Source: Vitrella brassicaformis CCMP3155
Taxonomy: Eukaryota; Protista; Chromerida
Length of the DNA stretch: 64,000 bases
Direction: 5' to 3'
Assembly: GCA_001179505.1 (NCBI GenBank)
Contig: CDMY01000153.1
Location: 1-64,000 of the forward strand
How positions within the stretch are numbered: position 1 is the first letter of the stretch; each line of letters opens with the position of its first letter. The position numbers and the translations under genes were made by a program. The notes beneath the pieces were generated by a model, which saw nothing but the letters and a program-made list of their open reading frames with translations, made no database searches and was not told the origin of the DNA. This document shows, in pieces, positions 1-54,238 of this stretch.

Positions 1-489
1 GGGGATGCAGTAGGTAGGTGCGCAACCTGTCTGTCTGTCTGTCTGTCCGTTCGAACAGGCAAAGGCACGTGCTTGAAGTGTCTTACGAGGCATTCCACAG
101 TGCTGGGGTCTTCGGCAGCGGCCAGCAGGCCGTGCTGGCGGCCCTCATGGGCCAGAAAGTTGGAGTCTACGTTGGGTGTATGCAGCAGGATTGGCTACTG
201 ATGCAGCACGAGGCATCCAGCCTCGCCGCGACCGGCAGCGCCTCATCGATCCTCTCCAACCGCATCAGCTACGTGTTCGGGCTCAAGGGGCCCTCCCTCA
301 CCATCGACACGGCCTGCTCCTCATCTCTCGTCGCCACGGACCTCGGCGCAAAGGCACTCATGCACACAGACGCTTGCAGACAAGGCGCACTCGTCGCCGG
401 CGTCAATCTCATGATGTCACAACACTCTTACGTAGCCGAGTGCAGGTAGGGACGACGAAAGAGGCAAAAGACCTTGTTGTTGCTGTCTC
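1..489 (+). repeat. Direct repeat of KS DNA including introns; second copy at 6874-7362 (and 881-1124 = 7663-7906)
   Basis: The sequences read identical at offset 6873, including the intronic (TGTC)n tract and intron 446-489. Confidence 0.95.
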
Positions 490-1170
490 ATTGTGACTTG
501 GTGTGACCGTGCATCTGCAGGGCTCAGATGCTGAGCATCGACGGCCGGTCCAAGACGTTTGACGCGAGTGCGAACGGTTACGTGCGTGGCGAAGGCGTGG
601 CGGCGGCGTTGCTTCAGCGGCTGGACCGTCCCGGCGAGGTGGAGCCTTTCGCGGTGATCCGTGGGAGCGCGAGCAACCACAACGCGATGAGTGCGTCCCT
701 GACGGCCCCCGCTGGCCCAGCGCAACAGCAAGTGATCCGCGAGGCTCTGAGGGAAGCCGACCTGTCGCCCAGCGCTCTGTCGTTTGCGGAGACGCACGGC
801 ACCGGGACACCTCTGGGCGATCCCATCGAGGTGTCGGCGCTCAAGAGCGTCTTCGGCGGGAAGCGGCCTGCTTGGTCGCCTCTGGTGCTGGGAGCTGTCA
901 AGACCAACATCGGCCACACCGAAGGGGCAGCAGGCATTGCCAGCCTCATCAAGGTCATCCTCACCTTGCGACACGGCTTGGCACCGCCAAACCTGCACCT
1001 CAAACAGCTCAATCCCTACATCGACTCGACGGGGGACTTCCCATTCGTCATGCCGGTCCAGGAGGGAGGAGGACTCAGGCTCAACACCACGGACGACACC
1101 TCACACACAGGCACACTCATCGGCAGTGCGTCGGCGTTCGGCTTCGGAGGGTCCAACGCGCACATCATCG
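59..1170 (+). other. PKS ketosynthase domain (first visible module)
   Basis: The Cys-His-His triad is intact: TIDTACSSSLVA, ETHGTGTPLGDPIE, KTNIGHTEGAAG; it ends with SAFGFGGSNAHIIVE. Confidence 0.95.
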
Positions 1171-4100
1171 TCGAGAGTCGCGTCGGACCGCTATCCCGAG
1201 GCATTCCAGGAAGTCACGCAGTGGAGCGAGCCCGCCCGCTTGTCACCTTTCTCTTCACTGGCCAGGGCGCCCAGTACGTCGAGATGGGCAAGGGCCTCTA
1301 TGAGACGGACGACGTGTTCCGAGTGAACCTGGATCGGTGCGCAGCTTTTGTGGACCCCCACCTGCCCCGGCCGATGCTTGGTCTCATGTACCCGAGCACC
1401 GAAGGAGAGCTGAGTGACACAGCAAGGGCGGAGCTTCAAGCAGTGCTGAACGAAACCCGCTACAGCCAGCCTGTGCTGTTCTCTCTGGACTATTCGCTGG
1501 CTCAGTCCTTGATCCATCGCGGTGTGTCACCCGACATGGTGATCGGTCACTCGCTCGGTGAGTACGTGGCTGCGACTGTTGCTGGTGTCATGTCGCTGGA
1601 AGTGGGCCTGTCCCTCGTCGTGGTCCGCGCGCGGCTCATGTACGACACCCCGCCTCAGGACGGTGTCATGGCAGCGCTCCTGGCCAGCGAGGACGAGGTG
1701 CTCAAGGGCATCAAGCAACTGAAGGACGGCGAGTCGTCATTCGACAGTCTGGCCGTCGCTGCCGTCAATGGCCCAAGAAAGGTGGTCGTGGCGGGCAAGC
1801 GATCAGAAGTGTCCACGCTTCTGAAAGCCCTGAAGGTCGACAAGGACGGCCACAAGATGCTCCCCGTGTCCCACGCCTTCCACTCACCTTTGCTGGGCTC
1901 GACGGTTCCACTCTTCCGCGACGCCATCCTCAACGAGCTCAGCACGACACCCCTGCAGGAGCCCTCCATCCCTTTGATCTCCACCGTCACGGGCAGGACA
2001 GCATCGGCGGGACAGCTGACGTCGGCCGACTACTGGGCCGAGCACATCACCAAGACTGTGAGGTTCATGGACGCCGTCAACAGCGCCATCAAGGCAGCCG
2101 AGGGAGGCCCGGGAGTGCAGTTCATCGAGGTTGGACCACAGCCGACGCTCATCAAGCTTGCGCGGAGCTTCCTCAAGGGTCATGCCTTGGACAAGGGCGT
2201 CACCTTGCTTGCACCTATGGACAAGAAGGGCGATGCCTCAGACCTTCTTGACTCCGTTGTCCGGACTGTCAAGGACTGGAAGTCGGCAAATGTGAAACAA
2301 GAGAAGAAAAAGGGGTGGCTTGACACGGACTACGACTGGAATCACCAGCCGCACTCCTGGCTACCATGCGGTGAGCAATACTATGGACAAGTGGACGACG
2401 GCGGGCCGTCTCATCCTCTCCTGGGCCGCCCCACTCGCGTGTCCTTCCCCTCTCCGTCTGGTGACGAGCGTCATAGCCACCGCTACGAGGCGACGTTTGA
2501 GCGTCGCGTCCGTCGGGACGTGTTGCGTATGCTGAAGGACCATGTGGTGTCTGGCGTGCCCATCATGCCGGCTGCCGCGTACATTGAGACAATCTGCGAG
2601 GCGGCCAGAAGCATGACCAAGACCGACGGCAGCTCCTCCCAAGAGGACGCATCGGTGTGTGTGCGGGGGATCGTGTTCGAGAAGCCGCTGAAGCTTTCCG
2701 ACGAGCTTCACTTGCACGTCACCGCCCGGCAGCAAGCTGGCCAGAACGGCGCGACGGTTATCACCCTCTGCTCGTCTTCCCTGGAGAGCAACAGCAGCGG
2801 CCCGCGGAAGGGCAAGCTCACCCAGCATGCCACAGGACGCCTCACGAGCGCTCAGCACTCTGTGAGCCCCTCAATGTGGTTTGTTGGGGTGGCAGCCGAC
2901 TCGGCCGCCGTGCATTCCTCCCATTCGCCGCACGTGGAGTCGGTCGATGCCTTGAAGGACCGGTGCCCGAAAGAGGTCGACGTTGAGACGCTCTACCAGG
3001 GGCTCAGGGACGCCGGGTTGTCTTACGGACCGGCGTTCCGCACCATCACCTGGCTTCGCGCCGGCGAGGGGGAAGTGCTGGCCTGCCTGCAAGAGCACGA
3101 CGGATGCATTGCTGCTTCATCGTCATCATCTATCGCCGGGACCTGGACGCTGCATCCAGCCGTCCTGGATGGAGCGCTGCAATCGGCCGCCGCGCTCTTG
3201 AGCGACGCCAAGGAGGACCACGACACTGCAGCAGCGGCACATGGTCCCCCCGCCCCCATGGTGCCTGTCAGAGTTGAGAAGGCTCTTGTGGTGGGAAGCA
3301 AGTCATCATCTCCCGCCTCGGCCATCTGCAGTCACGCCAGGCTCGTCAGCCGCGCCGCCCGAGCGGCTTCTCTCGACATCACTCTCACCGACATGGCCAC
3401 GGGAGACCTCCTCGCATCGCTCCAAGGAGTACAAGTCAGACAAATGGACGTGACGGCGCTCGTGCTTGCTACAGAGGAAACGGCGGAAATTGAGGACTCT
3501 CGTTACAAATCAGACGAGGCGTGCGCGTTGACGGATGAGGAGGCTGAGATGGACGCCGCTGGGATGGCGGCTCACGTTCGAGAGGTGGTGCTGGCCTCAG
3601 CCACGGAGGTCATGGGCGCGGCCGCCAGTCAACCGAGCAAAGAGGGCGGAGCTGCTGGTCCTGGNNNNNNNNNNNNNNNNNNNNNNNNNNNNNNNNNNNN
3701 NNNNNNNNNNNNNNNNNNNNNNNNNNNNNNNNNNNNNNNNNNNNNNNNNNNNNNNNNNNNNNNNNNNNNNNNNNNNNNNNNNNNNNNNNNNNNNNNNNNN
3801 NNNNNNNNNNNNNNNNNNNNNNNNNNNNNNNNNNNNNNNNNNNNNNNNNNNNNNNNNNNNNNNNNNNNNNNNNNNNNNNNNNNNNNNNNNNNNNNNNNNN
3901 NNNNNNNNNNNNNNNNNNNNNNNNNNNNNNNNNNNNNNNNNNNNNNNNNNNNNNNNNNNNNNNNGCGAGGGGGAAGTGCTGGCCTGCCTGCAAGAGCACG
4001 ACGGATGCATTGCTGCTTCATCGTCATCATCTATCGCCGGGACCTGGACGCTGCATCCAGCCGTCCTGGATGGAGCGCTGCAATCGGCCGCCGCGCTCTT

Positions 4101-7100
4101 GAGCGACGCCAAGGAGGACCACGACACTGCAGCAGCGGCACATGGTCCCCCCGCCCCCATGGTGCCTGTCAGAGTTGAGAAGGCTCTTGTGGTGGGAAGC
4201 AAGTCATCATCTCCCGCCTCGGCCATCTGCAGTCACGCCAGGCTCGTCAGCCGCGCCGCCCGAGCGGCTTCTCTCGACATCACTCTCACCGACATGGCCA
4301 CGGGAGACCTCCTCGCATCGCTCCAAGGAGTACAAGTCAGACAAATGGACGTGACGAGGTCTTCTGCGACAGCCCTGACGGACATGCTATGGGAGACCAA
4401 GTGGGAGGGACCCGTCGAGCGCGAGCAGAAGGAGGATGCCTCTGAGGAGCCTGCATGCCCGCGCCTTCTGCTTCTGGGCCTGACGCCTGAGTGGATCGCT
4501 AGGTTCGACGCATCTCGCGTTGGCCTGTTCGATGCCTCCCTGGTTCCGTTCGGTCACATCAGCAAGTACGGCACGGACGAGCTCAAGGCGATGTTGTCCG
4601 GCGCCACGAACAGTAGCCCGTGGGACGCCATCATTTACCTGGGCGGCGCGGACGACCAAGACCACGACCCATTGGCCGTGCTGGAGGAATGTCTAGCTCT
4701 GAGCCAGGCGCTTGACGGGATGGTGAGCCGCAAGAGGGGAAGCGAATCTCAGGACGTGGTCGCTCCCATGTGGCTCGTAACTCGCGGTGTCCACGCCATC
4801 AGTGGCGAGAGCGAGGCCGCAGCCGCCGCCCTCCCGCGTCATGCTGGCCTGTGGGGCTTTGCCAGGAGCGTGCGACTGGAATTGGCGGCCTCCTCTGGCC
4901 GGCTGGTGCCCTTCGGATGCGTCGATCTCGACTCAAGGGTGACCCTGGCGACAGACGCTGGCCGAGACGACGTACTCAAGGTACTTGTCTCGTCGGTCAT
5001 CAAGAGAGAGACAGGCGATATGATGGAGATTGCCCTTCGTCAACCGGGAGTAGATGGAGGGGACAAGCACGAGCTGTTCTACTCGCAGCTGGTCAAATCA
5101 ACTCTGAAGACCTACGTCGCCCACTCGGCCCTGGTGTCCGACAACGGCTGCTACGTCATTTCGGGCGGGCTGGGGTTCTTGGGTCTGCTGACAGCCAAGT
5201 GGCTGGCCGAGCAGGGCGCCAGGCACATTGTGCTGTTGTCTCGAAGGGGGCAGCCGACTCAGAGCGTATTGGACTCACCTCTCTGGGAGCTGCTGACGAC
5301 CGTCAAGGCATCTAAAGGGGTGGAGTTGGAGTGCATGGCCTGCGACGTGGCATCCTTGGACCAGTGCGAGGGCGTCGTCAAGGCAATGTCCTCGCGAGAT
5401 CTCACCATCAAGGGCTTCTTCCACTCCGCAGGGGTCCTGCACGATGCGCCTCTTGCCAAGCAAAGCCGGCAGACCATCGAGAGCGTCTTTCAGGCCAAGG
5501 TGAGTCACTCTCAGGTTGATCCATCCTGCAGTGACCCATCCTTGTGTCTGTCTGTGTGTGTGCCTGACTCTGGTTTGTATTCAGGTGGTGGGTGCGTGGA
5601 ACTTCCACTCGCTGCTTGACTCGTCGTCTCTGGACCACTTCGTCATGTACTCGTCTGTGGCAGCAGTCTTTGGCAACCTAGGCCAAGCCAACTACTCGGC
5701 CGCAAACGCATGCCTCGACGCCCTCGCGACCCATCGTCGGTCGCACGGCAAGCCCGCTGTGAGTATCCAGTGGGGCCCCTGGACTGAGGGAGGAATGGCG
5801 TCGCCACAGGTGATATCGCAGCTCGGCAAGGTGGGCATCAGGGGCCTGACAAATGAAGTGGGGTTGCAGCTCCTCGGTGACATCATGGCGGCAAGGGAAT
5901 CGGTCCGCACTGTGAGCTGCATCGGGGTGGAGTGGTCAAAATTCCTCTCATTGCGGCCCCCTGACAGCCAACGCTTCTTTGAGATCATCAAGAGACAACA
6001 TCCAGACGACAATGAGAGCCCCGGTGAAGAGGACGAGGCGTGCGCGTTGACCGATGAGGAGGCTGAGATGGACGCCGCTGGGATGGCGGCTCACGTTCGC
6101 GAGGTGGTGCTGGCCTCAGCCACGGAGGTCATGGGCGCGGCCGCCAGTCAACCGAGCAAAGAGGGCGGAGCTGCTGGTCCTGGCTCCTCCGATCAGCAGC
6201 AGAAGCAGCAGCAGCAGCAGCAGGAAGGGAGTCCGCCAGCTGCGCTGGGCGACGTGCCGTTCAACGACCTCGGGATTGACTCGCTGGGCCTGGTGGAGTT
6301 CCGAGACGCCGTGGCTCGCAAGCTGCGCGTCAAGCTGTCGGTCAGCCTGCTGTTCGATTACCCGACCATTAACGCGCTGATCGGGTACATCGTCGGCGAG
6401 AAGGTCGCCTTGCTGAGCAGGAGACGCTCGCCCAACAAGGCCGCCCCTGGCAGTGACACTCTCGCCGCCGCCTACCATGCTATTGGCCAGCGAGACCCAC
6501 CACCTCAGTCTCTGTCATCGGCGGGCGCCACCGTGAGCGCTGTGGGCGTCATGGGTCTCGCGTGCCGCTTCCCCGGCGGGGCCAACTCCTTGTCCACCTT
6601 CTGGGACGTGCTGCGGGAGGGGCGCAATTGCGTGACGACCATCCCCAGGGCGCGCTGGAACGCCGAGCTCTTCTACGATCCAGCTCCATTGGCCGACAGC
6701 AACACCCACTACACACGAGAGGGGGCATTCATCGACAAGGTGGAACTCTTCGACAATCAATTCTTCAAGATATCTCCAAGGGAGGCCAGGGCCATGGACC
6801 CCCAGTACGTAACGTAGCCATCCACAGACAGACAGACAGACAGACAGACAGGCAGATAGATAGATAGATAGATGGGGATGCAGTAGGTAGGTGCGCAACC
6901 TGTCTGTCTGTCTGTCTGTCCGTTCGAACAGGCAAAGGCACGTGCTTGAAGTGTCTTACGAGGCATTCCACAGTGCTGGGGTCTTCGGCAGCGGCCAGCA
7001 GGCCGTGCTGGCGGCCCTCATGGGCCAGAAAGTTGGAGTCTACGTTGGGTGTATGCAGCAGGATTGGCTACTGATGCAGCACGAGGCATCCAGCCTCGCC

Positions 7101-10100
7101 GCGACCGGCAGCGCCTCATCGATCCTCTCCAACCGCATCAGCTACGTGTTCGGGCTCAAGGGGCCCTCCCTCACCATCGACACGGCCTGCTCCTCATCTC
7201 TCGTCGCCACGGACCTCGGCGCAAAGGCACTCATGCACACAGACGCTTGCAGACAAGGCGCACTCGTCGCCGGCGTCAATCTCATGATGTCACAACACTC
7301 TTACGTAGCCGAGTGCAGGTAGGGACGACGAAAGAGGCAAAAGACCTTGTTGTTGCTGTCTCNNNNNNNNNNNNNNNNNNNNNNNNNNNNNNNNNNNNNN
7401 NNNNNNNNNNNNNNNNNNNNNNNNNNNNNNNNNNNNNNNNNNNNNNNNNNNNNNNNNNNNNNNNNNNNNNNNNNNNNNNNNNNNNNNNNNNNNNNNNNNN
7501 NNNNNNNNNNNNNNNNNNNNNNNNNNNNNNNNNNNNNNNNNNNNNNNNNNNNNNNNNNNNNNNNNNNNNNNNNNNNNNNNNNNNNNNNNNNNNNNNNNNN
7601 NNNNNNNNNNNNNNNNNNNNNNNNNNNNNNNNNNNNNNNNNNNNNNNNNNNNNNNNNNNNNNTCTGGTGCTGGGAGCTGTCAAGACCAACATCGGCCACA
7701 CCGAAGGGGCAGCAGGCATTGCCAGCCTCATCAAGGTCATCCTCACCTTGCGACACGGCTTGGCACCGCCAAACCTGCACCTCAAACAGCTCAATCCCTA
7801 CATCGACTCGACGGGGGACTTCCCATTCGTCATGCCGGTCCAGGAGGGAGGAGGACTCAGGCTCAACACCACGGACGACACCTCACACACAGGCACACTC
7901 ATCGGCGGATTGGGCTCCTTTGGTTTCGGAGGGTGCAATACTTACCTGATCATGGAGACTCGTATCGGTCCGGTATCCCGAGGGAAGGACAACGGAGAGG
8001 AGAAGGACTGGCTCTGCAACCCTGTGTCGTGGGATCATCGACCATTCGGGTGGGACATGGTTCAGCTAATGGTTGATGCCACTCAGTCGGCTCAGCGGAG
8101 ACTGAGCGAACACGGCCTCCTCGATGGTCAAGTATCCCAGCCCCTTGGTGAGGATGGGAAGGACATTGACCTCAAGACGATGAAGGAGGAGGATGTGTCA
8201 AAGCTGATGATTGAGTTGGTGGCGGATCTGTCGGGGCAAGAGGTCTCCGCTGAAACTCCCTTATTCGAGATGGGAATGGACTCCCGCGCCGTCATCGAGC
8301 TGCACGAGTCTGTGAGGAAAATGACGGGAATCGTCATGCCGCAGACCCTCCTCTTCGACAACCCCACCGTCACTACACTTGCCAAGTTCATCCTCGAGCA
8401 GGCGCACAACATGGACACCGCATCCATCGTCGACATCAGCTCCATCAGCACCACCCAGTCTCGGTCGCGCAAGCGGAGGGCCACTGACTTCGCCGTTGAT
8501 CCGCTCTATGACCTCGCCGACCTCAGGGCCAACCTCCGTATTGACTTGTCCATGACGGCTCCGGCCAAGCCGCCTCGAGACTACACCAATGTGCTGCTGA
8601 CTGGCGCAACAGGCATTGTGGGCCGCTTCCAGCTTGCCTCGCTGCTCGATCGCAATGTGGACGGCAAGAGACTCACCGTGCACTGCATCGTTCGCACCAA
8701 GAGCCGGAACGAGGGGCTCTCACGCATCAGGGCGGCCTGCGAGGAGGCCATGATCTGGAAGGACGAGTGGACAGCTCGGATTGTGGTGCTGCTGGGCGAC
8801 TTGAGCAAGGAGTTGTTCGGACTTGGCCAGGAGAGGTTTTCCACTCTCTGCGAGACCATGGACGCCATCTACCACACTGGAGCGAGTGTATCGCTGTACC
8901 AGGGGTATACTCGTGGGCGAGTGACTAACACACTTCCTCTGCTGCCCATGATCGAGCTGTGCACCACTCATCGCCTCAAGCCCCTCCACTTCACTTCCAC
9001 GCTCGCTATCTTCCCCGCCTTCACTGCCAACTTCACCAAGGAGTTTGCCGAGGAGGAGCTCGTGGAGGGCGCCGCGCCATCCATCCAGCACATGAAGAGG
9101 GTATTCCCACCCCAGCAGCAGGGCTACCCCTGGACTAAGTACGTGTGCGAGGAGCTGCTGAGGGAGGCACGTGACCAGGGGCTGCCGGTGACCATCTACA
9201 GGCTGCCCAACACCAACATGGCGATCTCGACTGGCTTCACAGGCATGTCCAACGTCGCCACGGCACTGATCGCCAGCTTCATCCAGGAGGGGTTCTTCCC
9301 GCGGGCCGCCAGCTGGGCCAACAACACACCCATCGACATGGCTGCTGACGTCATCGTCTCCCTTTCGCTCAAGGACGACAGAAAGCACTGGATGTACCAT
9401 GTCTGCAATCCCAGCGTCTTCACCGAGTAAGCAAGACACTCATTGAGTAGGCAGGAGTGTCACACAGATTGATGCAACAGCGTAATGGTTCGACATCAGG
9501 TCTCTGCTAAGAGAGTGGGCCCAAAGAGCAGGGATCATCCTGAGGCCTGTGAGCTTCGAGGACTTCACGGCGGCCATTAAGGCGAGGGGCCCCAAGTCGC
9601 CCATCTTCAACCATGTGCCCGTCATGCGGCACTGGCAGAAGTACTGGTACGAGGACCCCACATCGGACCGCACCGAGGTGCCCATCAGCACATCCAACAT
9701 GACGGAAGACATCGACGTCAGCTGGCCTGCCGCCGAGCAGCTCTGGAGAGCATCCCTGGTCTACCTGATGAGGCAAGAACTCCTGCCCAGCGACAGCAAG
9801 GCCATCGCCCTGGACCCACAGGTCCTGCTCGATATGGCTCGGGGGCAGACGGGACTCAGCCAGCTGGGGGGGTCGGTGGACGAGGAGGATGTGCTTGAGG
9901 CCTTTCGTGTCTTCATCCAGTCGGCCCTGGAGGAGAGCAGTAACATGTCCTTCCTGGGCAGGCTCTTGCTGAGCCACAGCATCCGCCAAAGACTCTGCAC
10001 CCTCCTCTACATGACTCACAGGGCCCACACCCACCCCGCCATCCGTTGTCAGCAGATCAAGCAGCCCCTTTTTGTCGTCGGTTTCGACAGAGCCTCAGTG

Positions 10101-11258
10101 ATGCTTGTGCAGCAACTGCTGGCCTGCGACGAGGGCAACAGGGCACCGACATTCAGTGAGATGCTCTGCCCCTTTGGTGAGGACGGCGAGTACGTCCACG
10201 ACTCGCCGGAGAAGGTGAGGTGAAGGGGAGAAATGGCTAGATGTGGATGAATCCTGTGCCCAACCCATTGCCTTGTATCCCGTCTTGTGTGTGTGTCTGC
10301 AGGATTCTCGCCTTGCACCAGCCCAGGAGGCGATGGATGTCATGTTCGGGAGCAGCGAGTGCGTGAACCGCCTCGGCCCTCTCACAGCCGACATGGCCTT
10401 CGACGACTCGATGATACTGCGGCCCGGGACGCAGTTTGACGCTCCCGAGTACGAGTCGCGGCTGTCAGGCAGCAGCGGGTCCGAGGCCCCCCAGGGCTAC
10501 GGCTTCCACAAGACGTTTCTGCAGCACCTGCAGTGGCAGCAGGGAGGGCAGCCCAAGAGGTGGCTGTTGGCGTCGCCTGACCATGTTGGCCACCTCGACG
10601 ACGTCCTCACCACATACCCTGACGCTAAAATTGTATTTGCACACCGGTATCGACAGCGTTGTACATTCAGGAGACTCTTTTCATTCAGTACAGTACACCC
10701 TGCGCGTATGTATGTATGCATGTATGTATGTATGCTGTCAGGGATGTGTGCGAGACGGTTGCCGGTCGGTGTCAAGAGACCCTGTCCCTCCGACATGGCC
10801 TCATGACGGTCGACGCATCCAAGGTGGCCGAGAGGGAGCTCCGCCAGATGGCGACCAACGCCAAGGCCGCGGGCGACTTCAGGAGGCGCCACCCGCACCT
10901 CAAGGCCCAGTTCGCCGACGTGACGCTGAGTGACCTCTTGAAAAACCCCGTGGGCCGCGTCAAGCGGCTGTACAGGAAGCTCAAGCTGTCTCCCTTGTCC
11001 CACCGCTCGTCCCAGGCCATGTGGAAGATGGTGCTGACCAACAGGAGCAAGTGGAGGACAATGGTCAAGGGTATGCCTGTGTCGGTGTCGCACTTTGGGA
11101 TCGACGAGGACGACAGCCGCGTCACTTGGCTGTCGGTGGAGAGCCTCATGGGCAAGAAAAGGAAGCGCAGGAGGCTGGTAGTGCGATGTGTTGGTAGCCT
11201 CCATCCATCGGTAGTGTGCTGTCGATCGGAGCCCACTCAGGTAGACGTTCTTCCTTGA
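59..11258 (+). CDS. Multimodular type I polyketide synthase / FAS-like megasynthase, 5'-partial, ending in a thioester reductase plus sulfotransferase-like domain
   Basis: The spliced reading gives KS (MDPQQR, DTACSSS, HGTGT, GHTEG), AT (GQGAQY, GHSLG, HAFH), DH (HVVSGVPIMP, LDGALQ), KR (GGLGFLG, LHD, YSAAN), ACP (LGIDSL; MGMDSR), R (TGATGIVG, YPWTK) and an ST-like region. GT-AG introns read at 446-520, 5500-5584, 6805-6931, 7319-gap, 9427-9499, 10215-10302 and 10647-10741. The stop at 11258 is taken from the ORF track; the last exon boundary is uncertain. Confidence 0.97.
1242..2220 (+). other. PKS acyltransferase domain, malonyl-CoA type
   Basis: FLFTGQGAQY; active-site GHSLG at 1545-1559; HAFH specificity motif at 1872-1883 (HAFH is the established malonyl signature). 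Confidence 0.92.
2412..3455 (+). other. PKS dehydratase domain
   Basis: HPLLG start, HxxxGxxxxP motif (HVVSGVPIMP, 2541-2570), YGPAF, and catalytic Asp in HPAVLDGALQ. Confidence 0.9.
3064..3455 (+). repeat. 392-bp direct repeat of the DH C-terminal half; second copy at 3965-4356
   Basis: Identical-looking sequence on both sides of the 3665-3964 gap, diverging after ...GACGTGACG. Confidence 0.95.
3513..3664 (+). repeat. Near-identical copy of the pre-ACP segment at 6032-6183
   Basis: Same DEACALTDEEAEMD...GAAGP peptide; two synonymous differences seen (ACG/ACC, CGA/CGC). Confidence 0.92.
3665..3964. other. Assembly gap (300 N)
   Basis: N run flanked by repeated PKS sequence. Confidence 1.
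4370..5960 (+). other. PKS ketoreductase (structural plus catalytic subdomains), probably B-type, no enoyl reductase
   Basis: Structural part (WLVTRG, GLWGFARSVRLE) followed directly by YVISGGLGFLG, HSAGVLHDA (LDD-like) and GQANYSAAN. No ER domain is inserted. Confidence 0.88.
6060..6400 (+). other. PKS acyl carrier protein
   Basis: PFNDLGIDSLGLVEFRDAV...LLFDYPTI; phosphopantetheine Ser at 6281-6283. Confidence 0.92.
6805..6931 (+). repeat. Representative intron with complementary microsatellite arms: (CAGA)n near the donor, (TGTC)n near the acceptor
   Basis: Seen directly in the sequence; the same pattern recurs in many introns of the glucan synthase, MRE11, alveolin and uS9 genes. Confidence 0.85.
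7363..7662. other. Assembly gap (300 N)
   Basis: N run inside the duplicated KS; the paralogous copy implies about 391 bp are missing. Confidence 1.
8180..8400 (+). other. Terminal acyl carrier protein
   Basis: ETPLFEMGMDSRAVIEL...LLFDNPTV; Ser at 8282-8284. Confidence 0.88.
8585..9760 (+). other. Thioester reductase (R/TD) release domain
   Basis: NVLLTGATGIVG Rossmann motif, VLLGDLSKELFGL, IYHTGASV, GYPWTKYVCEELL (YxxxK), VTIYRLP. Confidence 0.9.
9820..11100 (+). other. P-loop sulfotransferase-like domain (bacterial/mycobacterial-type family), with degenerate PAPS motifs
   Basis: MSFLGRLLL...HPAIRCQQIKQPLFVVG, FHKTFLQHLQWQQ...RWLLASPDH...YPDAKIVFAHR|D. These match, by recall, the layout of Sulfotransfer_3-type enzymes (PIFIVGLPRSGTT; RWVLKSPxH; FPDARFVxTHRDP). 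Confidence 0.75.
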
Positions 11259-12678
11259 TGGATGGGCGATGTGGTAAGTGTCTGTGTAGATGTATGTATA
11301 CAGATAGGCGAGGCGGGGGATGGATGCGATGCGATGCGATTCATGGTGTTTGTGTGTTTGTAAGTGCTTAAATGAAGGAGAGATGCAATGCAATGCATGG
11401 TGTGCATTGCATGACATTCACTCATTTATATGCGTTGCATGCTGCTGTCTGGACCGATCCATACATACATTAGGATACATGCACTGCACACATACATGCC
11501 GTGTGCCGCTGCGCCGCCCCCGCAGCCAGTGGCCCTTGGCGGTGTGGTGTGTGCCGTGTCTGTCTGTCTGTCTGTCTGTCTCTGTGTCTCTGTGTCTGTG
11601 TCTGTGTGCATCGCATCCATAACATCCATCCATCCATGGGACACTCCCTTACTTGCTTATTTGTCGTTGGTTGTATGTGGCATGCATTTTTCGTGCTGTC
11701 ACTTGCCTGTACGTACGTGTGTACTGATCTCTTCCCTGTAGGTGTGTGTACTGCCTGCCGTCCCTCGGCCCACAAAACGTGGGCTGCTTATCTTATTGAT
11801 CAGCGCTGCGGGGGAGCGGAGTGTCAGATATTATGAGGGAGGGGGTGTACCTGTCTGTCTCTGCTGTCAGTATGTTTCCATACGCACTTGTCATGTCAGC
11901 TCAGAGCGCTGCGTGCATACATACGTACAGGCAGAACCGATGTTGGGTTTCTGGGCATCGCATCGCATCGCATTCCATCTGGTGTGTTGCCTGTCTGCTG
12001 AACGGCAGCCAGGCAGACATGGTGATTTCCTACGACCTACACATCGCATAGTGTGTTGCTTCCTTGCCTGCGTACTTAGTTCCACATATGGGTGCGTCTG
12101 AGGACGCGCACTGCACCGCACCGCACCGCACCCAGCTAGTCGATTTTTGCCATCCATCGGTGTGTCCCCTCTTTTATGGAGAGAGTTTGTGTTGTTGACT
12201 TTGCGACGTACAGAGGTTTCGGACGATTGCCGACAGAGTGTGTTTTTTTCCTTTGTGCCCCTCGCGCCGCGGTGCCGTGTTGTACCTGTCTGGCGCGAGC
12301 CGTCACAAGGTTGTTCACACCGTTGTTGTCAGTCATGTGCTCCTTTCTTTCGTCTCTTGGTGTACATACATACATTACATGAACGCTGCACTGCACACAC
12401 CGTACACCCATCCATCCCTGTGCATCACTTGGGTTCTCTTTTCCTACACTGTGTCTTCGTCTTCTGTTTGTTTCATGCATTCATTGCATGCGTAGATGAA
12501 TGACATGTGCGAAGAGCCTGCTAGGTACGCAGAAGGGCTGACAGTGACAGACCAGACAGGTCTGTGAATATGGCGGAAACAAAAACACCAGACAGCGTGT
12601 GGCGCCACAGACTAATATTTCTGTCATCAACGGCCGCACAACAACACACAATACCACCAGCGCCGGCCGCCCGTTTCC

Positions 12679-18600: not shown

Positions 18601-21600
18601 GTCTCTGCTGCCCGGCCAGCCCCACCGCGACCCCAGCCGTCGTGTGGGGGGTGGTGTGTCGTCGTCCCGTGGGGGCGCCTCGTCTTCTAGCCCATCGCGG
18701 GTGGGAGCGTCGGGTAGCAGCGGGGTGGGGACACACAATGGGAGGGACCCCCCGACCGACGGGAGTGTGCCGGGCCCCACCAGCGGTAGCCCTAGCTGGA
18801 GGAGGGACCTAGACACGTGCCTGGCGCTCTACTACCGAAGGGCTTACCGCATACTCACCGCCACCAAGTTCGACCTCGGCACCTCAGAAGCCAGACGAAG
18901 GTACGGGACACGACACGACTACACACGCACTCAGCCATGCACCGCCCAGCCCAACCGACCCGCACACCGACCGATCCATATATGCGTTGGGTTGTCTTGT
19001 GTTGTGAATTTATCTCTGTATCTCTGTGTGTGTATATAAGGTTGAAGTACTTCATGACGTCGATGTTCATGGACATGCCCGAGGCTCCCAGCGTGGCCAA
19101 GGCCATGTCACTCACCACCCTCATACCCTACTATGAAGGTAGGTAGGCAAGGCACACCACACAAGCCAAACCAAGACAACGCAACGCACACAGAAGAGAG
19201 AGACGTGTGTGTCCGTCCATCGACTGATTGCACGTATGTTGTGTGTATCTTCCTTCCTTGATTCCTTGCTTCATTCCTTGCTTCCTCCCTCCCTCCCGGC
19301 CCACCCTACTTGCCTACGATGCGATGCATGCCATGGCTGTCTGCAGAGGATGCCTGGCTGCCTTTGGATGAGTTGTACAAGACGACGAGCGAGGGCGTGA
19401 CAAAGCTGGAGTTCCTCCAATCACTCTACCCATCAGAGTGGCAGGTCAGGTCGGTCGGACCAGTCGGTCCAGTACACACACGAATAGATAGACAGACCCC
19501 CCTCCCCCCCTCCCTATTCTTTTCATTCCCTGACGTTGGGCGTGTTTAACCTTGTTCAGAATTTCCTGGAGCGCAAGGACCCCGACGGGCTCCTGTACTC
19601 GTGCTCAAGCCAACTCTCACAGGACGACATCAGGTCAGGCACCCCCCCCCCCCCCCCCCCCCCCCCCCNNNNNNNNNNNNNNNNNNNNNNNNNNNNNNNN
19701 NNNNNNNNNNNNNNNNNNNNNNNNNNNNNNNNNNNNNNNNNNNNNNNNNNNNNNNNNNNNNNNNNNNNNNNNNNNNNNNNNNNNNNNNNNNNNNNNNNNN
19801 NNNNNNNNNNNNNNNNNNNNNNNNNNNNNNNNNNNNNNNNNNNNNNNNNNNNNNNNNNNNNNNNNNNNNNNNNNNNNNNNNNNNNNNNNNNNNNNNNNNN
19901 NNNNNNNNNNNNNNNNNNNNNNNNNNNNNNNNNNNNNNNNNNNNNNNNNNNNNNNNNNNNNNNNNNNNCCCCCACCCACCCACACAGACATGCACTGCAC
20001 ACATAGCTAGCATATTTATGGGGATCTGACGGCTGAACGTGTCTGTCTGTGTGTGGCTTTTGTTTGTGTGTGTGGACTGCAGTGAGGAGGAGCTGCGTAA
20101 GAATTACTTCGATGTGTACGAGCGGCTCAACGGCAACCTGGTGGCTTTGGACGACTTCCGCGATGCGCTCCAGCAGTGGGCGTCCTTCAGGGGACAGACG
20201 CTCTGCCGCACCATCCGAGGGGTACTCTACAACACGCAGGCGCTCCAGCTGCAGGCATATGTGGAGGAGCAGCTCTTGACACACAACCACCGCCAATGGA
20301 GCCGATCGGCCGCTGGGGGAGAAGGGGCAGGCACAGGCCCCTTGGACGACTGTGTGGGGCAGGGTCTGCCGGGTGGGGCAACACCACCCATGCACCTATC
20401 CAGAGACAGGTGGGGGGGTCGGGGCACATACCATACCCTACCATACACACATCGTATGTGTCGTACCGGACACACACCTATTGATGTGATGCACCGCACC
20501 CATGAATGGACTGCCTGTCTCCCTATCCGTCTGCGGGGTTCCGCATGCATTCTATGTGCGTATATGTGTATGTATGTATGGGTGGGTGCGGTGTAGGAAT
20601 CAGCTGAGTATAGACGACGAGCACCGTTTGTGTTGGGAGTCGATAGCCCCACTGGGGGGCGACAGGGCACTCGAACCACACGAGACGGCACCATGCCATA
20701 TCTGGAGAGGTAGGTATATAGGTCACTCAACCGTACGTAATCCGCACTCACAGTCACACACGCACGCTCTGACGCATTCATTCATCAACCCTACATGTAT
20801 AATTGATTATGTGTGCGTTGCTTCTGCTCTGCATGTCCATCCATCCATCCATGCATACGTCCCTTTTGGCGTACGTACCGTACAGAGAGCAACCGCGTCA
20901 AGGCCTATCAACGTGATCCATACGCACTGGCGCTATCTGTCCTCAAGTAAGCATTATACATACCTCCCTCCATACACACACGCCTACCTACCGGCAGGGA
21001 GGGAGGGAGCCTTCATTGGTTTGGCTTCATTTATCGGTATGGCTGGTTGGTGTTGTCTGTCTGTTGCTTGTGTAGGTATCAGTTGTGCGTGGCAGCTCAG
21101 GTGTTCGGCCGTGACCTGGTGGATCAGACAGGCGACAGCCGTGCGGCTTTGCGTGTGAAGGGTCTGGTGGACATGCTGCAGCAGCACCACCTGACGCTAC
21201 GGGTGGCGTGCATCGAGGAGGCCCTCGTGGCTGGGGTGCTCCGCAAGGCGTCGGTCTTCTACAAGTGGTGCCCCGTAGCTGGCAGGCTCGAGCGTGTCTA
21301 CCGCATCCTGCTGCCGCACGTCGACACCGGAGACGGCACCAACCCGCTACCCGCTATCGGAGAAGGTACGTACGGAGACCAAGGGAGGGAGGGAGGGAGG
21401 GAGGGAGGGAGACGGGCGCGGAGACAGACAGACATGTGGGACACACATGGCATTTATTTGCTGTTGTTTGTTTGGTGTGTGAAGGCAAGCCCGAGAATCA
21501 GAATGCAGCCATGATTTTCACACGTGGGGAGCTGCTGCAAACCATCGACATGAACATGGACAGCTACTTCGAAGAGGTAGGTAGGTAGGCAGGTTGGTAG

Positions 21601-52400: not shown

Positions 52401-54238
52401 ACCCACCTGATTTCTAGTATGGCCACATGTTTGGGTAGGGCTTCTCCTGCGGCCAGGGAGGTGGCGACAGACGAACCAGGCTGGACCACGTGGAAGTGAG
52501 ACTGGTGGATGGATGGACGGACGGACGCACGGGGGACAGGCAGGCAGGCAGACAGACAGACAAACACGAGGGAAACAGACTAGTTAGTCGTCTGATGGGT
52601 GGCGGATGGGCTGACCCTGACTGCCTCACTGACCTGTGCAGAGTCGACAGGATCAATAAGGCAGTCGTGCTCGTGACACTGCACACATGTACGTACGTAG
52701 ATGCAGGGGGAAGGGAAGGGCTATGCATGGCGGAATTGCAGGACGGGTCCGCTTGATTTGGCAGGCCAGCCAGCTTACCCATATCACGAGATCCAAAAAC
52801 TGTGGCAATTGGGCTTCGTGAATGCAGTTTTTTGACGTGGATCCGCCCCCATGACCCTTGTACCTGCACCACACAGATTCACCAAGCAAGTGAGCCTCGA
52901 TACGACGCCATATGGATTCCTCTACTCGATCCCGTGTGTGTCGCTACTGTTTATTGTCCTGTCTATTGTCCGGTTTGTTGTCCTGTCTGTCTGTCTGTAT
53001 CCTCCCTCTGTCCCCGTGTCTGTGTCTGTGTCTGTGACCTGTTTTGATGGATGACCATGAGGTTGAACCACTCGCTTGCACCAGGCTCCTGGCCATCAGA
53101 CGACCCATCCACACCTGTGCACCAAGGCGATCGCCATCAAACACACAGTATTGCGTTTTCGATCAGTGTGTGAGTGCATCGGTTATGGGTTGCTCTGACG
53201 GCCCAGCCCGCGGCGCCCCTAGGCTGACCCAGCCGTATGGCTCACCCATGTCATTATCGACCGCCACACTCCTCTTCGGCACATGAAACTTGACCTGTGA
53301 CACACACACACACAGAGTAGATACCATACCACAGAGAGGGGAAATATGGGGGCTCCCTACTGCACTGCCTCCCTCCGTCCGTGCGTCCCTCCCTTCTCCC
53401 CTCCCTCCCTCCCTCCTCCCCTACCTGGACATTGCTGAACGCCCGGTGCAGTCGCTCGTCGCGGATGTTGCCCAGCCCGTAGAGAGCCACCTTGGTCTGG
53501 CCCTTGCGCAGCAGGACTGGATACACATTGATGTTGTCCAGGTCTTCGCTCTTGCCGAAGTAATTCACCTGACACCCACACAGGCCCCGCACCGCACCCA
53601 GACGGGCACGACACACATAGAAAAGGCGTGGCGTGAATGAATGCCACGCACGACAGCCAGCATACATACATACGATACATAGATGGATGGATGGATGGCT
53701 CTCTTACAAGTGAGGCCGTGCTGAGAAGGTCGAGTGCTGAAAGGTTGTTGTCGCCCGAAGGATCGTCTGACCGAAGTGACACACCGACCGACCGACCGAC
53801 CAAGGCGCACACGCAACAAACGACAAACAACAGAACACCATGTTTCTGGATAGACGAGTACATACATACATACATACAGGATATGGACATGTGCAAGATG
53901 ATAGATTGAGCCGAACCTGCCTGACAGGGCTGGGGGGGNNNNNNNNNNNNNNNNNNNNNNNNNNNNNNNNNNNNNNNNNNNNNNNNNNNNNNNNNNNNNN
54001 NNNNNNNNNNNNNNNNNNNNNNNNNNNNNNNNNNNNNNNNNNNNNNNNNNNNNNNNNNNNNNNNNNNNNNNNNNNNNNNNNNNNNNNNNNNNNNNNNNNN
54101 NNNNNNNNNNNNNNNNNNNNNNNNNNNNNNNNNNNNNNNNNNNNNNNNNNNNNNNNNNNNNNNNNNNNNNNNNNNNNNNNNNNNNNNNNNNNNNNNNNNN
54201 NNNNNNNNNNNNNNNNNNNNNNNNNNNNNNNNNNNNNN

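What the first reader, a model, noticed from the sequence alone, without database searches (positions are those of the whole stretch)
8180..11258. PKS ends in ACP - thioester reductase - sulfotransferase-like fusion
Seen: after the last ACP there is an intact R domain (TGATGIVG, YPWTK) followed in frame, across three introns, by a domain with the layout of bacterial-type P-loop sulfotransferases. Established: apicomplexan megasynthases such as Cryptosporidium FAS1/PKS1 release product through a terminal reductase, and the well-known PKS sulfotransferase arrangement (curacin CurM and olefin synthases) is ST-TE, not R-ST. Inference: reductive release to an alcohol followed by sulfation or another tailoring/binding step would give a sulfated polyketide alcohol or sulfolipid. 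I do not know of a characterised R-ST release module, but I cannot search for one.
Basis: partly seen in the sequence, partly recalled or inferred. Interest (0 to 1): 0.8.

Follow-up and report, generated by a model that had tools for sequence, protein, structure and literature searches.

The report
Polyketide synthase ending reductase plus sulfotransferase-like domain
The tail of a giant lipid-building enzyme gene of the alga Vitrella brassicaformis really ends in a chain-releasing reductase fused to a sulfotransferase-shaped domain, but this ending has been known from parasites and sponge bacteria since 2013, and this copy has lost residues that normally hold the sulfate donor.

Summary
Window 8180-11258 (+) is the transcribed 3' end of a Vitrella brassicaformis type I PKS/FAS-like gene (public model CEL93275.1). 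It encodes the last ACP, an intact thioester reductase (NAD_binding_4, E 1e-47) and a Sulfotransfer_3 domain (E 2e-17). The predicted fold matches mycobacterial Stf1/Stf9. Spliced RNA contigs prove all three introns. The R/ST junction lies inside one exon.

The claim of novelty is not supported. R-ST was described in 2013 for bacterial SwfB and coccidian type I FAS (PMC3908369; drawn in PMC3760245). I found it here in gregarines, Rhytidocystis, Selenidium, Cardiosporidium, Colpodella, Chromera and three more Vitrella genes. This scan had already reached the same verdict on paralogous DNA of this genome (s1-205475, s1-197154). No paper found tests the didomain biochemically.

One point is new. 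This copy replaces five near-invariant PAPS-binding or catalytic positions: P-loop GTT to SVM, a Lys to Ala, and the 3'-phosphate Ser to Gly. Every chromerid or colpodellid copy examined departs at one or more of the six key motif positions, each at a different set of them. Yet the domain is under purifying selection (dN/dS 0.29).

My best reading is reductive release to an alcohol, with a non-canonical and probably non-sulfating ST-like domain. This is an unusual variant of a known, untested kind.

The parts
6398..6805 (+). N-terminal exon of the last ketosynthase (KS). No acyltransferase follows this KS.
   Evidence: Pfam ketoacyl-synt profile 3-89. tblastn with the paralog's KS.
6933..7362 (+). 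KS exon carrying the active-site Cys (IDTACSSS). It runs into the N gap. Window 6874-7362 is 100% identical to window 1-489, the KS of the preceding module.
7363..7662 (.). A run of 300 N (assembly gap) inside the last KS. By comparison with the upstream KS copy it hides about 390 bp, which would include the HGTGT motif.
7663..7990 (+). C-terminal part of the last KS (KTNIGHTEGAAG present).
   Evidence: Pfam Ketoacyl-synt_C profile 81-118..
8213..8392 (+). Last ACP, with phosphopantetheine site GMDSR.
   Evidence: PP-binding E 1.3e-10 at P0001 residues 128-187.
8597..9426 (+). Thioester reductase (R), Rossmann and catalytic part. TGATGIVG lies at 8600-8623 and YPWTK (Tyr/Lys of the SDR triad) at 9125-9139.
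   Evidence: NAD_binding_4 E 1.3e-47 with the full profile 1-258. Sequence read.
9427..9499 (+). Intron 1 (73 nt, GT..AG).
   Evidence: Removed in RNA contig X6 record 24, which runs from the KS region through ACP and R to 9644.
9500..10214 (+). Exon B. It holds the R C-terminal subdomain (to about 9820) and the first ~130 residues of the ST-like domain, in one open frame.
   Evidence: Relatives align over the whole exon at 32-38% identity.
10080..10103 (+). Degenerate 5'-phosphosulfate-binding loop GFDRASVM, where the family has G-L-N-R-S/T-G-T-T.
   Evidence: Among 37 relatives the three changed positions are G in 33, T in 31 and T/S in 36. The loop aligns with the TPST PRSGTT loop.
10215..10302 (+). 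Intron 2 (88 nt, GT..AG).
   Evidence: Removed in RNA contig X6 record 25.
10303..10646 (+). Exon C, the middle of the ST-like domain. Ala at 10570-10572 replaces the family's Lys (34 of 37). The His-Arg of the 3'-phosphate motif begins at 10642.
   Evidence: Sulfotransfer_3 E 1.3e-7 on the exon alone..
10647..10741 (+). Intron 3 (95 nt, GT..AG). It splits the Arg codon of the HRD motif.
   Evidence: Removed in contigs of two studies, X6 record 25 and X1 record 3.
10742..11258 (+). Exon D. It holds the C-terminal part of the ST-like domain (fold ends near 11181), Gly at 10764-10766 in place of the 3'-phosphate Ser, a basic tail KKRKRRR at 11154-11174, and the stop TGA at 11256-11258.
   Evidence: (contig unspliced across 10913-11550).

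Best explanation
This is the chain-release end of a Vitrella brassicaformis type I PKS/FAS-like megasynthase. In the window the domain order is ...KS-AT-DH-KR-ACP-KS-ACP-R-ST-like.

Shown:
- The last ACP, an SDR-type thioester reductase and a ~390-residue domain with the Stf1/Stf9 sulfotransferase fold are one spliced reading frame.
- R and ST belong to the same conserved didomain that ends apicomplexan and chromerid type I FAS/PKS and that forms bacterial SwfB.

Inferred mechanism:
- The acyl chain on the last ACP is released by NAD(P)H-dependent reduction to the aldehyde and probably on to the primary alcohol. This has been measured for the Toxoplasma relative TgTR.
- In canonical relatives the ST would then sulfate that alcohol with PAPS. 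This is proposed in the literature but has never been tested.

This copy departs from the canonical pattern:
- Five near-invariant PAPS-binding or catalytic positions are replaced: P-loop G, T, T to S, V, M; a Lys to Ala; and the 3'-phosphate Ser to Gly.
- The P-loop Arg, the conserved Glu and two His are kept.
- The domain evolves under purifying selection and is modelled as one compact unit with R.

I therefore think the ST-like domain here is most likely a non-canonical, catalytically impaired module. It would be kept for a structural or product-binding role beside R, so the product leaves as a long-chain alcohol rather than an alkyl sulfate.
For: One gene:
- Spliced RNA contigs remove all three introns.
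- The R/ST junction lies inside exon B.
- My translation is identical to CEL93275.1.

Domains:
- NAD_binding_4 E 1.3e-47 and Sulfotransfer_3 E 1.8e-17.
- AF2 model of the ST domain: pLDDT 88, pTM 0.87.
- Foldseek top hits Stf1 and Stf9. PDB sequence hit 2zq5 at E 3.8e-15.

Family membership:
- Relatives aligning across the R C-terminus plus the ST N-terminus end in ACP-R-ST where the ACP region is present.
- R-fused STs form one clade with 100/98 support.
- A bacterial member sits directly after a SwfA-like PKS.

Reduction to an alcohol:
- TgTR performs a 4-electron reduction to the primary alcohol (bioRxiv 10.1101/2023.05.23.541938).

Degeneracy of the ST domain:
- Column counts are, and the correspondence to the TPST PAPS motifs is.
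- The other Vitrella copies and the Chromera, Colpodella and GHVR01048845 copies examined each lack one or more of the six key motif residues, at different positions.
- 11 of the 16 apicomplexan-type rows keep all six positions, as do both bacterial R-ST rows (P0062, P0147) and all 13 stand-alone STs.

Signs that the domain is still functional:
- dN/dS against the paralog is 0.29 for ST and 0.24 for the R core.
- There is no rate asymmetry between the two copies.
- The R-ST didomain model has pLDDT 86 and pTM 0.83 with no disordered linker.
Against: - The catalytic-candidate residues are retained: the P-loop Arg, the Glu about 23 residues later, the invariant His, and the His-Arg of the 3' motif. 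The two closest paralog types keep a Ser or Thr at the last P-loop position.
- Other sulfotransferase families tolerate non-Gly P-loops (from my own knowledge, not tested here), so weak or altered PAPS binding cannot be excluded.
- Purifying selection is equally compatible with an active enzyme.
- No coordinates of the model were available to inspect the pocket.
- Whether the product is an alcohol or an aldehyde is inferred from relatives only.
- The link between this tail and the upstream modules crosses a 300-N gap that is flanked by a 100% identical repeat.
Confidence: 0.58

Rival explanations
1. The ST domain is an active PAPS-dependent sulfotransferase, so the module reduces the thioester to a primary alcohol and sulfates it, giving a long-chain alkyl or polyketide sulfate.
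For: - The domain is a full-length Sulfotransfer_3 / Stf1-type fold.
- It keeps the P-loop Arg, the conserved Glu, the invariant His and the His-Arg of the 3' motif.
- It is under purifying selection comparable to that on R.
- It belongs to the R-fused ST clade, whose other members are canonical.
- Alkyl sulphate was the product proposed for SwfB (PMC3908369).
Against: - Five positions that are 84-97% conserved in the family are replaced. They correspond to the PAPS-contacting loop, Lys and Ser of TPST.
- Other chromerid copies have lost different ones of these residues, even the P-loop Arg (P0156) or the His-Arg (Chromera P0016). That is the pattern expected once catalysis is no longer selected.
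- The Pfam score is about half that of the gregarine copies (65 bits against 113-128).
Confidence: 0.3
2. CurM/olefin-synthase-like logic. The ST acts on an ACP-bound hydroxyl to create a sulfate leaving group, which is then eliminated, rather than decorating the released alcohol.
For: - The fold search lists the CurM and OLS ST domains among the hits (4gbm E 3.6e-4, 4gox E 8.6e-4).
- A separate Vitrella gene fragment (CEL93269.1) has KR-ACP followed directly by the ST-like domain, without R.
Against: - No thioesterase follows.
- ST comes after R, not directly after ACP.
- The last module has no KR that could make a beta-hydroxyl.
- Similarity to CurM ST is remote (TM 0.32-0.44), whereas the Stf1/Stf9 matches are much stronger.
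- The same degenerate PAPS motifs argue against any sulfotransfer.
Confidence: 0.05
3. The fusion is an annotation or assembly artefact. R and the ST-like region would be separate genes, or the ST-like exons would be non-coding.
For: - No single RNA contig bridges 9645-9873.
- The scaffold has an N gap and a perfect repeat just upstream.
Against: - The R C-terminus and the ST N-terminus share one stop-free exon.
- Introns on both sides of that exon are spliced in frame in RNA contigs.
- dN/dS is 0.29.
- The gap-free paralog has the identical order.
- Transcriptome-derived relatives carry R and ST in one ORF.
Confidence: 0.02

Closest known systems
SwfB of the swf clusters of sponge symbionts (Poribacteria and others; Della Sala et al. 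2013, PMC3908369)
   Same: - It has an N-terminal thioester reductase fused to a C-terminal Sulfotransfer_3 domain.
- The ST belongs to the same R-fused clade.
- I confirmed a bacterial example sitting directly after a 2335-aa KS-AT-DH-ER-KR-ACP PKS.
- Its function is likewise untested. The proposed product is a primary alkyl sulphate.
   Different: - SwfB is a free-standing ~830-aa protein that works in trans with SwfA, whereas here R-ST is fused to the megasynthase after an ACP.
- The two bacterial R-ST copies in the alignment (P0062, P0147) keep the canonical RTGTT, Lys and Ser motifs, and this one does not.
C-terminal ACP-R-ST of apicomplexan and chromerid type I FAS/PKS. This covers coccidian FAS/PKS1 per PMC3908369 and PMC3760245, and the members found here: Gregarina niphandrodes XP_011134163, Gregarina sp. 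Poly1, Rhytidocystis, Selenidium, Cardiosporidium, Colpodella and Chromera Cvel_19857.
   Same: - Same domain order and homologous sequence, at 32-38% identity over the R/ST junction exon.
- Same Pfam pair.
- It is the closest family, and this gene is a member of it.
   Different: - Where the upstream region was scanned, relatives have (ER-)KR-ACP-R-ST. This gene and its paralog CEL96740.1 insert an AT-less KS-ACP before R.
- Chromerid and colpodellid copies, this one included, have degenerate PAPS motifs. 11 of the 16 apicomplexan-type rows keep all six key positions.
Toxoplasma gondii TgPKS2 release module, KS5-TR (Keeler et al. 2023, bioRxiv 10.1101/2023.05.23.541938)
   Same: - A terminal KS with a conventional active site sits next to a thioester reductase.
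- TgTR makes the primary alcohol by 4-electron reduction, which is the best experimental analogue for R here.
   Different: - The paper describes no ST domain in that module.
- An ACP lies between KS and R here.
- TgTR's NADH preference was not examined for this R.
Mycobacterial sulfotransferases Stf1 (PDB 2zq5) and Stf9 (PDB 2z6v)
   Same: They are the closest solved structures by sequence (E 3.8e-15; family profile E 2e-94) and by fold (TM 0.80 and 0.72 by target). The match includes the helical N-terminal extension.
   Different: - They are stand-alone ~400-aa enzymes in a separate clade.
- They carry RTGTT, Lys and Ser intact.
CurM / olefin synthase ACP-ST-TE off-loading
   Same: A sulfotransferase-fold domain is embedded at the end of a PKS.
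   Different: - The order is ST-TE, with no reductase.
- The ST there belongs to a distant branch (Foldseek E about 1e-4 to 1e-3, TM about 0.3-0.5).
- The chemistry is sulfation of a beta-hydroxyl, followed by decarboxylative elimination.

Membership tests
R-ST terminal didomain (SwfB / apicomplexan type I FAS-PKS tail) | Thioester reductase of the NAD_binding_4 type with a Rossmann GxxGxxG motif and the Tyr-x3-Lys catalytic pair | tested here: met
   E 1.3e-47 over the full-length profile. TGATGIVG and YPWTK are present.
R-ST terminal didomain (SwfB / apicomplexan type I FAS-PKS tail) | Sulfotransfer_3 domain directly C-terminal of R in the same polypeptide | tested here: met
   Same exon and same frame. 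Spliced RNA contigs and identity to the public model support this. Pfam E 1.8e-17.
R-ST terminal didomain (SwfB / apicomplexan type I FAS-PKS tail) | The ST domain groups with R-fused STs rather than with stand-alone STs | tested here: met
   In the ML tree the R-fused clade has 100/98 support, and the four Vitrella copies form one subclade.
R-ST terminal didomain (SwfB / apicomplexan type I FAS-PKS tail) | Served by a carrier protein of a type I PKS/FAS | tested here: met
   PP-binding lies about 70 residues upstream of R. KS, AT, DH and KR lie further upstream.
Catalytically competent PAPS-dependent sulfotransferase (Stf1/TPST-like, Sulfotransfer_3) | Sulfotransferase fold | tested here: met
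   AF2 pLDDT 88. Foldseek places Stf1 and Stf9 on top, and all 50 best hits are sulfotransferases.
Catalytically competent PAPS-dependent sulfotransferase (Stf1/TPST-like, Sulfotransfer_3) | 5'-phosphosulfate-binding loop R-[ST]-G-T-[TS] | tested here: not met
   The loop reads R-A-S-V-M. Arg is kept, but G, T and T are replaced. In 37 relatives these positions are G in 33, T in 31 and T/S in 36.
Catalytically competent PAPS-dependent sulfotransferase (Stf1/TPST-like, Sulfotransfer_3) | 3'-phosphate-binding motif: Arg, and a Ser eight residues later | tested here: not met
   His-Arg is kept, but the Ser is replaced by Gly (Ser in 33 of 37 relatives). The motif aligns to TPST R...S.
Catalytically competent PAPS-dependent sulfotransferase (Stf1/TPST-like, Sulfotransfer_3) | Conserved Lys before the P-x-H motif (aligned with the Lys of the TPST NKDPF motif) | tested here: not met
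   Ala is found here and in the closest paralog. Lys is found in 34 of 37 relatives.
Catalytically competent PAPS-dependent sulfotransferase (Stf1/TPST-like, Sulfotransfer_3) | Candidate catalytic base (Glu about 21-23 residues after the P-loop Arg) | tested here: inconclusive
   The Glu is present (FSEMLCP; 36 of 37 relatives have Glu). Its role as the base is inferred from the spacing in TPST2 and CurM ST, which I recall from memory.
Catalytically competent PAPS-dependent sulfotransferase (Stf1/TPST-like, Sulfotransfer_3) | Binds PAPS and transfers sulfate | not testable with these tools
   This needs binding and activity assays.
CurM / olefin-synthase ACP-ST-TE release module | ST placed directly after ACP and followed by a thioesterase | tested here: not met
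   R lies between ACP and ST. The protein ends about 25 residues after the ST fold, with no TE.

The most novel reading that the evidence does not exclude
Chromerid and colpodellid megasynthases carry a pseudo-sulfotransferase. The ST fold stays fused to the release reductase and is held under purifying selection after PAPS binding and catalysis were lost, in different ways in different paralogs. It would have been repurposed, for example as a product-binding or hand-off module, or as a scaffold that R needs. The parasitic apicomplexan and bacterial relatives would keep the active enzyme.
Probability: 0.4. Interest if true: 0.55.

Novelty: new variant of a known kind. Interest (0 to 1): 0.36.

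Why it matters
The R-ST tail is widespread. It occurs in coccidian oocyst-stage PKS/FAS, gregarines, chromerids and sponge-symbiont swf clusters. Its product, presumed to be alkyl sulfates, has never been shown.

The free-living, culturable alga Vitrella has several paralogs and would be a convenient system to test it.

The comparative pattern found here gives a concrete, testable contrast. Most parasite copies and the bacterial copies keep canonical PAPS motifs. Every chromerid or colpodellid copy examined has them degraded in a different way, and the two closest Vitrella paralogs are under purifying selection. The questions are whether these lineages make alcohols instead of sulfates, and what a catalytically dead ST domain does next to a release reductase.

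It does not open a new category of enzyme. The architecture itself has been in the literature since 2013, and this scan already flagged it on paralogous DNA.

Tried and rejected
1. The word-indexed protein search with exon B found nothing, because of its length filter. The exhaustive HMMER search then gave 509 hits.
2. My first guess for the intron 1 acceptor (9545) was wrong. The RNA contigs put it at 9500.
3. The five 'variant' bases at 10841-10890, seen in all runs, looked like an allele. They are exactly the paralog's sequence (L001:13701-13834), so this is cross-mapping.
4. I tested whether this copy's ST evolves faster than its paralog's. Tajima-type counts with six outgroups gave chi-square values all below 2, so there is no asymmetry.
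5. The antisense ORFs over the region (10497-11417 on the minus strand and 8720-9439 on the minus strand) have no Pfam family and were rejected as coding.
6. Ten long ORFs elsewhere in the window were scanned for sulfate-metabolism or tailoring genes. None had a Pfam hit, which is not informative for an intron-rich eukaryote.
7. Six literature searches looked for a biochemical test of R-ST or a chromerid description. One further search attempt failed on a term-length error. Only the 2013 domain-level descriptions and the TgTR work turned up.
8. The model's coordinates cannot be inspected with these tools, so the PAPS pocket geometry was not examined.

Full report
**What is there**

The window is GC-rich eukaryotic DNA. 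Its + strand from position 1 to 11258 encodes part of a multi-exon type I PKS/FAS-like megasynthase. Pfam on the long open frames gives KS(C-term)-AT-DH, then DH...KR, then KR-ACP-KS(N-term). After a 300-N gap come KS(C-term)-ACP-R.

The exact-sequence look-up identifies the organism as Vitrella brassicaformis CCMP3155. The public model is CEL93275.1 / A0A0G4ED51 (1056 aa, named 'Carrier domain-containing protein'). It starts at a Met just after the gap and is letter-for-letter my spliced translation.

**Checking the observation**

- The last ACP is at 8213-8392.
- The reductase is a full-length NAD_binding_4 domain (E 1.3e-47). It has the Rossmann motif TGATGIVG (8600-8623) and the Tyr/Lys motif YPWTK (9125-9139).
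- There are three introns: 9427-9499, 10215-10302 and 10647-10741. Each is GT..AG.
- Contigs of an RNA-like run (X6) lack all three introns. A second study (X1) lacks the third.
- One X6 contig of 2965 nt runs from about 1.1 kb upstream of 7700 through ACP and R, across intron 1, to 9644. Another runs 9874-10838 across introns 2 and 3. A third runs unspliced from 10913 past the stop codon (11256-11258) to 11550.
- The only unbridged piece is 9645-9873. It lies inside exon B, which is a single open frame. That exon holds both the C-terminal subdomain of R and the first ~130 residues of the ST-like domain. The fusion therefore does not rest on a splice prediction.
- On the spliced protein, Sulfotransfer_3 scores E 1.8e-17 (64.7 bits against a cutoff of 27) over profile positions 1-212 of 216.
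Antisense ORFs over the region have no family hits.

**Is it a sulfotransferase fold?**

Yes.
- The three exon pieces hit PDB 2zq5 collinearly. The whole domain hits 2zq5 (Stf1 of M. tuberculosis) at E 3.8e-15 and 2z6v (Stf9 of M. avium) at 1.7e-9.
- An AlphaFold2 model built on 40 homologs has pLDDT 88 and pTM 0.87.
- Foldseek puts Stf1 (TM 0.80 by target) and Stf9 (0.72) on top. Every one of the 50 best hits is a sulfotransferase, including TPST1/2 and the CurM and OLS ST domains at much weaker scores.

**How common is R-ST?**

An exhaustive HMMER search with exon B, which spans the R C-terminus and the ST N-terminus, against 1.84 billion representatives gave 509 hits. Of these, 43 were below 1e-10.

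Proteins that align over the whole exon end in ACP-R-ST wherever the ACP region is present in the sequence:
- Gregarina sp. Poly1 (5971 aa)
- G. niphandrodes 'putative type I fatty acid synthase'
- Rhytidocystis pertsovi
- Selenidium pygospionis
- Cardiosporidium cionae
- Digyalum
- Polyplicarium
- Colpodella angusta
- Chromera velia Cvel_19857 (6729 aa)
- three further Vitrella genes

Free-standing R-ST proteins of 770-920 aa also occur. One of them lies on a 337-kb metagenomic contig, directly after a 2335-aa KS-AT-DH-ER-KR-ACP PKS and before a second sulfotransferase. That is a swf-type cluster.

In a maximum-likelihood tree the R-fused ST domains form one clade (100/98 support), separate from ~410-aa stand-alone STs. 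The four Vitrella copies form one subclade.

**Literature**

- Della Sala et al. 2013 (PMC3908369) describe SwfB as a fusion of a thioester R domain and an ST domain. [quoted passage not shown] They suggest conversion of the carboxylate to a primary sulphate.
- Bushkin et al. 2013 (PMC3760245) draw ST at the end of coccidian PKS1.
- Keeler et al. 2023 show that the Toxoplasma TgPKS2 reductase performs a 4-electron reduction to the primary alcohol, and that the preceding KS5 has a normal Cys-His-His triad.
- Six searches found no biochemical test of an R-ST module and no description of it in chromerids.
- This scan's own earlier follow-ups on two other pieces of the same genome reached the same conclusion for paralogs.

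Its statement that no R-ST module has been characterised still stands.

**What differs in this copy**

The comparison uses 37 relatives.

Residues the window protein keeps:
- the invariant Gly and the Arg of the P-loop
- the conserved Glu about 23 residues later
- the invariant His of the P-x-H motif
- the His-Arg of the 3'-phosphate motif

Near-invariant positions it replaces:

| Position | Family | This copy | Frequency of family residue |
|---|---|---|---|
| P-loop, 3rd after Arg... (R-[ST]-G-T-T reads R-A-S-V-M) | Gly | Ser | 33/37 |
| P-loop | Thr | Val | 31/37 |
| P-loop | Thr/Ser | Met | 36/37 |
| Before P-x-H | Lys | Ala | 34/37 |
| Eight residues after the motif Arg | Ser | Gly | 33/37 |

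A profile of the family aligns these segments with the PRSGTT loop, the NKDPF lysine and the R...S motif of tyrosylprotein sulfotransferases, which have been crystallised with PAP. That these residues contact PAPS is established knowledge of sulfotransferases. I did not test it here.

The pattern is lineage-wide:
- The closest paralog CEL96740.1 has RVSVT, Ala and Gly.
- The CEL93269/A0A7S1KFH3 pair has RVSVS and Pro for the Ser.
- CEM36688.1 has lost even the P-loop Arg (GPDVLGNA).
- Chromera Cvel_19857 has RAAGS and lacks the His-Arg.
- Colpodella has RAGCT and Val for the Ser.
- Most gregarine, Rhytidocystis, Selenidium and Cardiosporidium copies are canonical: 11 of the 16 apicomplexan-type rows keep all six key positions. 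Both bacterial R-ST rows and all 13 stand-alone STs do too.

Different losses at the same functional sites in related copies are what one expects when catalysis is no longer selected.

**The domain is nevertheless not decaying**

I mapped codons of this gene and of the paralog (locus L001) and compared them. The three intron positions of the tail appear conserved.

| Region | dN/dS | dS |
|---|---|---|
| ST-like domain | 0.29 | 0.56 |
| R core | 0.24 | not stated |
| Non-conserved C-terminal tail | 0.73 | not stated |

- Relative-rate counts show no acceleration of this copy.
- A model of the whole R-ST didomain has pLDDT 86 and pTM 0.83, with no disordered linker. This suggests a fixed two-domain unit.

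**Best explanation and rivals**

- Shown: one gene, an intact R, an ST fold, membership of the known R-ST didomain family, degenerate PAPS motifs, and purifying selection.
- Inferred: R releases the chain reductively, probably to a primary alcohol as in TgTR. The ST-like domain here is probably not a canonical PAPS-dependent enzyme and serves a structural or product-binding role (about 0.58).
- Main rival: it is still active and the product is an alkyl sulfate (about 0.3).
- A CurM-like leaving-group role (about 0.05) and an artefactual fusion (about 0.02) are unlikely.

**Caveats**

- The tail is joined to the upstream modules across a 300-N gap (7363-7662). The 489 bp before the gap are 100% identical to window 1-489, the KS of the preceding module. 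The 321 bp after the gap are 92.6% identical to 881-1201.
- The gap-free paralog has the same order AT-DH-KR-ACP-KS-ACP-R-ST, so the architecture is credible. The join itself remains unverified.
- I could not inspect model coordinates.

**Verdict**

This is a real feature, correctly seen. Its kind has been known at the domain level since 2013 and remains biochemically untested. This copy is a divergent variant, with an inserted AT-less KS-ACP and a degenerate ST. Interest is modest.

Noticed in passing
window 1-489 vs 6874-7362; 881-1201 vs 7663-7983: The KS of the preceding module and the last KS share a 489-bp stretch at 100% identity. It includes 59 nt of intron and ends exactly at the 300-N gap. 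After the gap, identity drops to 92.6%. This is either very recent intragenic conversion between modules or an assembly collapse or mis-join.
   Followed up: partly
window 3665-3964, 7363-7662, 19669-19968, 53939-54238: There are four runs of exactly 300 N (scaffold gaps). Two lie inside the PKS gene, so the public gene models are split there.
   Followed up: no
P0003 (CEL93269.1, 1.5-kb contig) and P0004 (A0A7S1KFH3): Another Vitrella PKS fragment reads KR-ACP, then a 68-residue linker, then the ST-like domain, with no reductase in between. It is 95% identical to a transcriptome-derived protein. The order is ACP-ST, as in CurM, but no TE is seen.
   Followed up: partly
window 10811-10920 / L001:13701-13834: A contig with five differences appears in every run and is exactly the paralog CEL96740.1. 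In the RNA-like run it has about 3-4 times the depth of the flanking contigs. Contig depth is only a rough guide.
   Followed up: yes
window 11615-12578: RNA-run contigs cover this stretch downstream of the stop codon at about 3-4 times the depth of the PKS exons. The short ORFs there have no Pfam family. It may be a long 3' UTR or an unannotated neighbouring transcript.
   Followed up: partly
L002:2001-12535: This is a bacterial swf-like cluster on a 337-kb metagenomic contig. It holds a SwfA-like 2335-aa PKS, a SwfB-like R-ST protein (821 aa, start overlapping the PKS stop) and a third gene for a separate 355-aa Sulfotransfer_3 protein.
   Followed up: no
window 11154-11174: A basic run KKRKRRR lies near the C-terminus, after the ST fold. 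It is not conserved in the paralog, and the model has low confidence there.
   Followed up: no
L001:1-2154: Upstream of the paralog's model lies a separate gene model with AMP-binding (FAAL-like)-ACP-KS-AT. This suggests the paralog's full megasynthase starts with a fatty-acyl-AMP ligase loading module that the annotation has split off.
   Followed up: no
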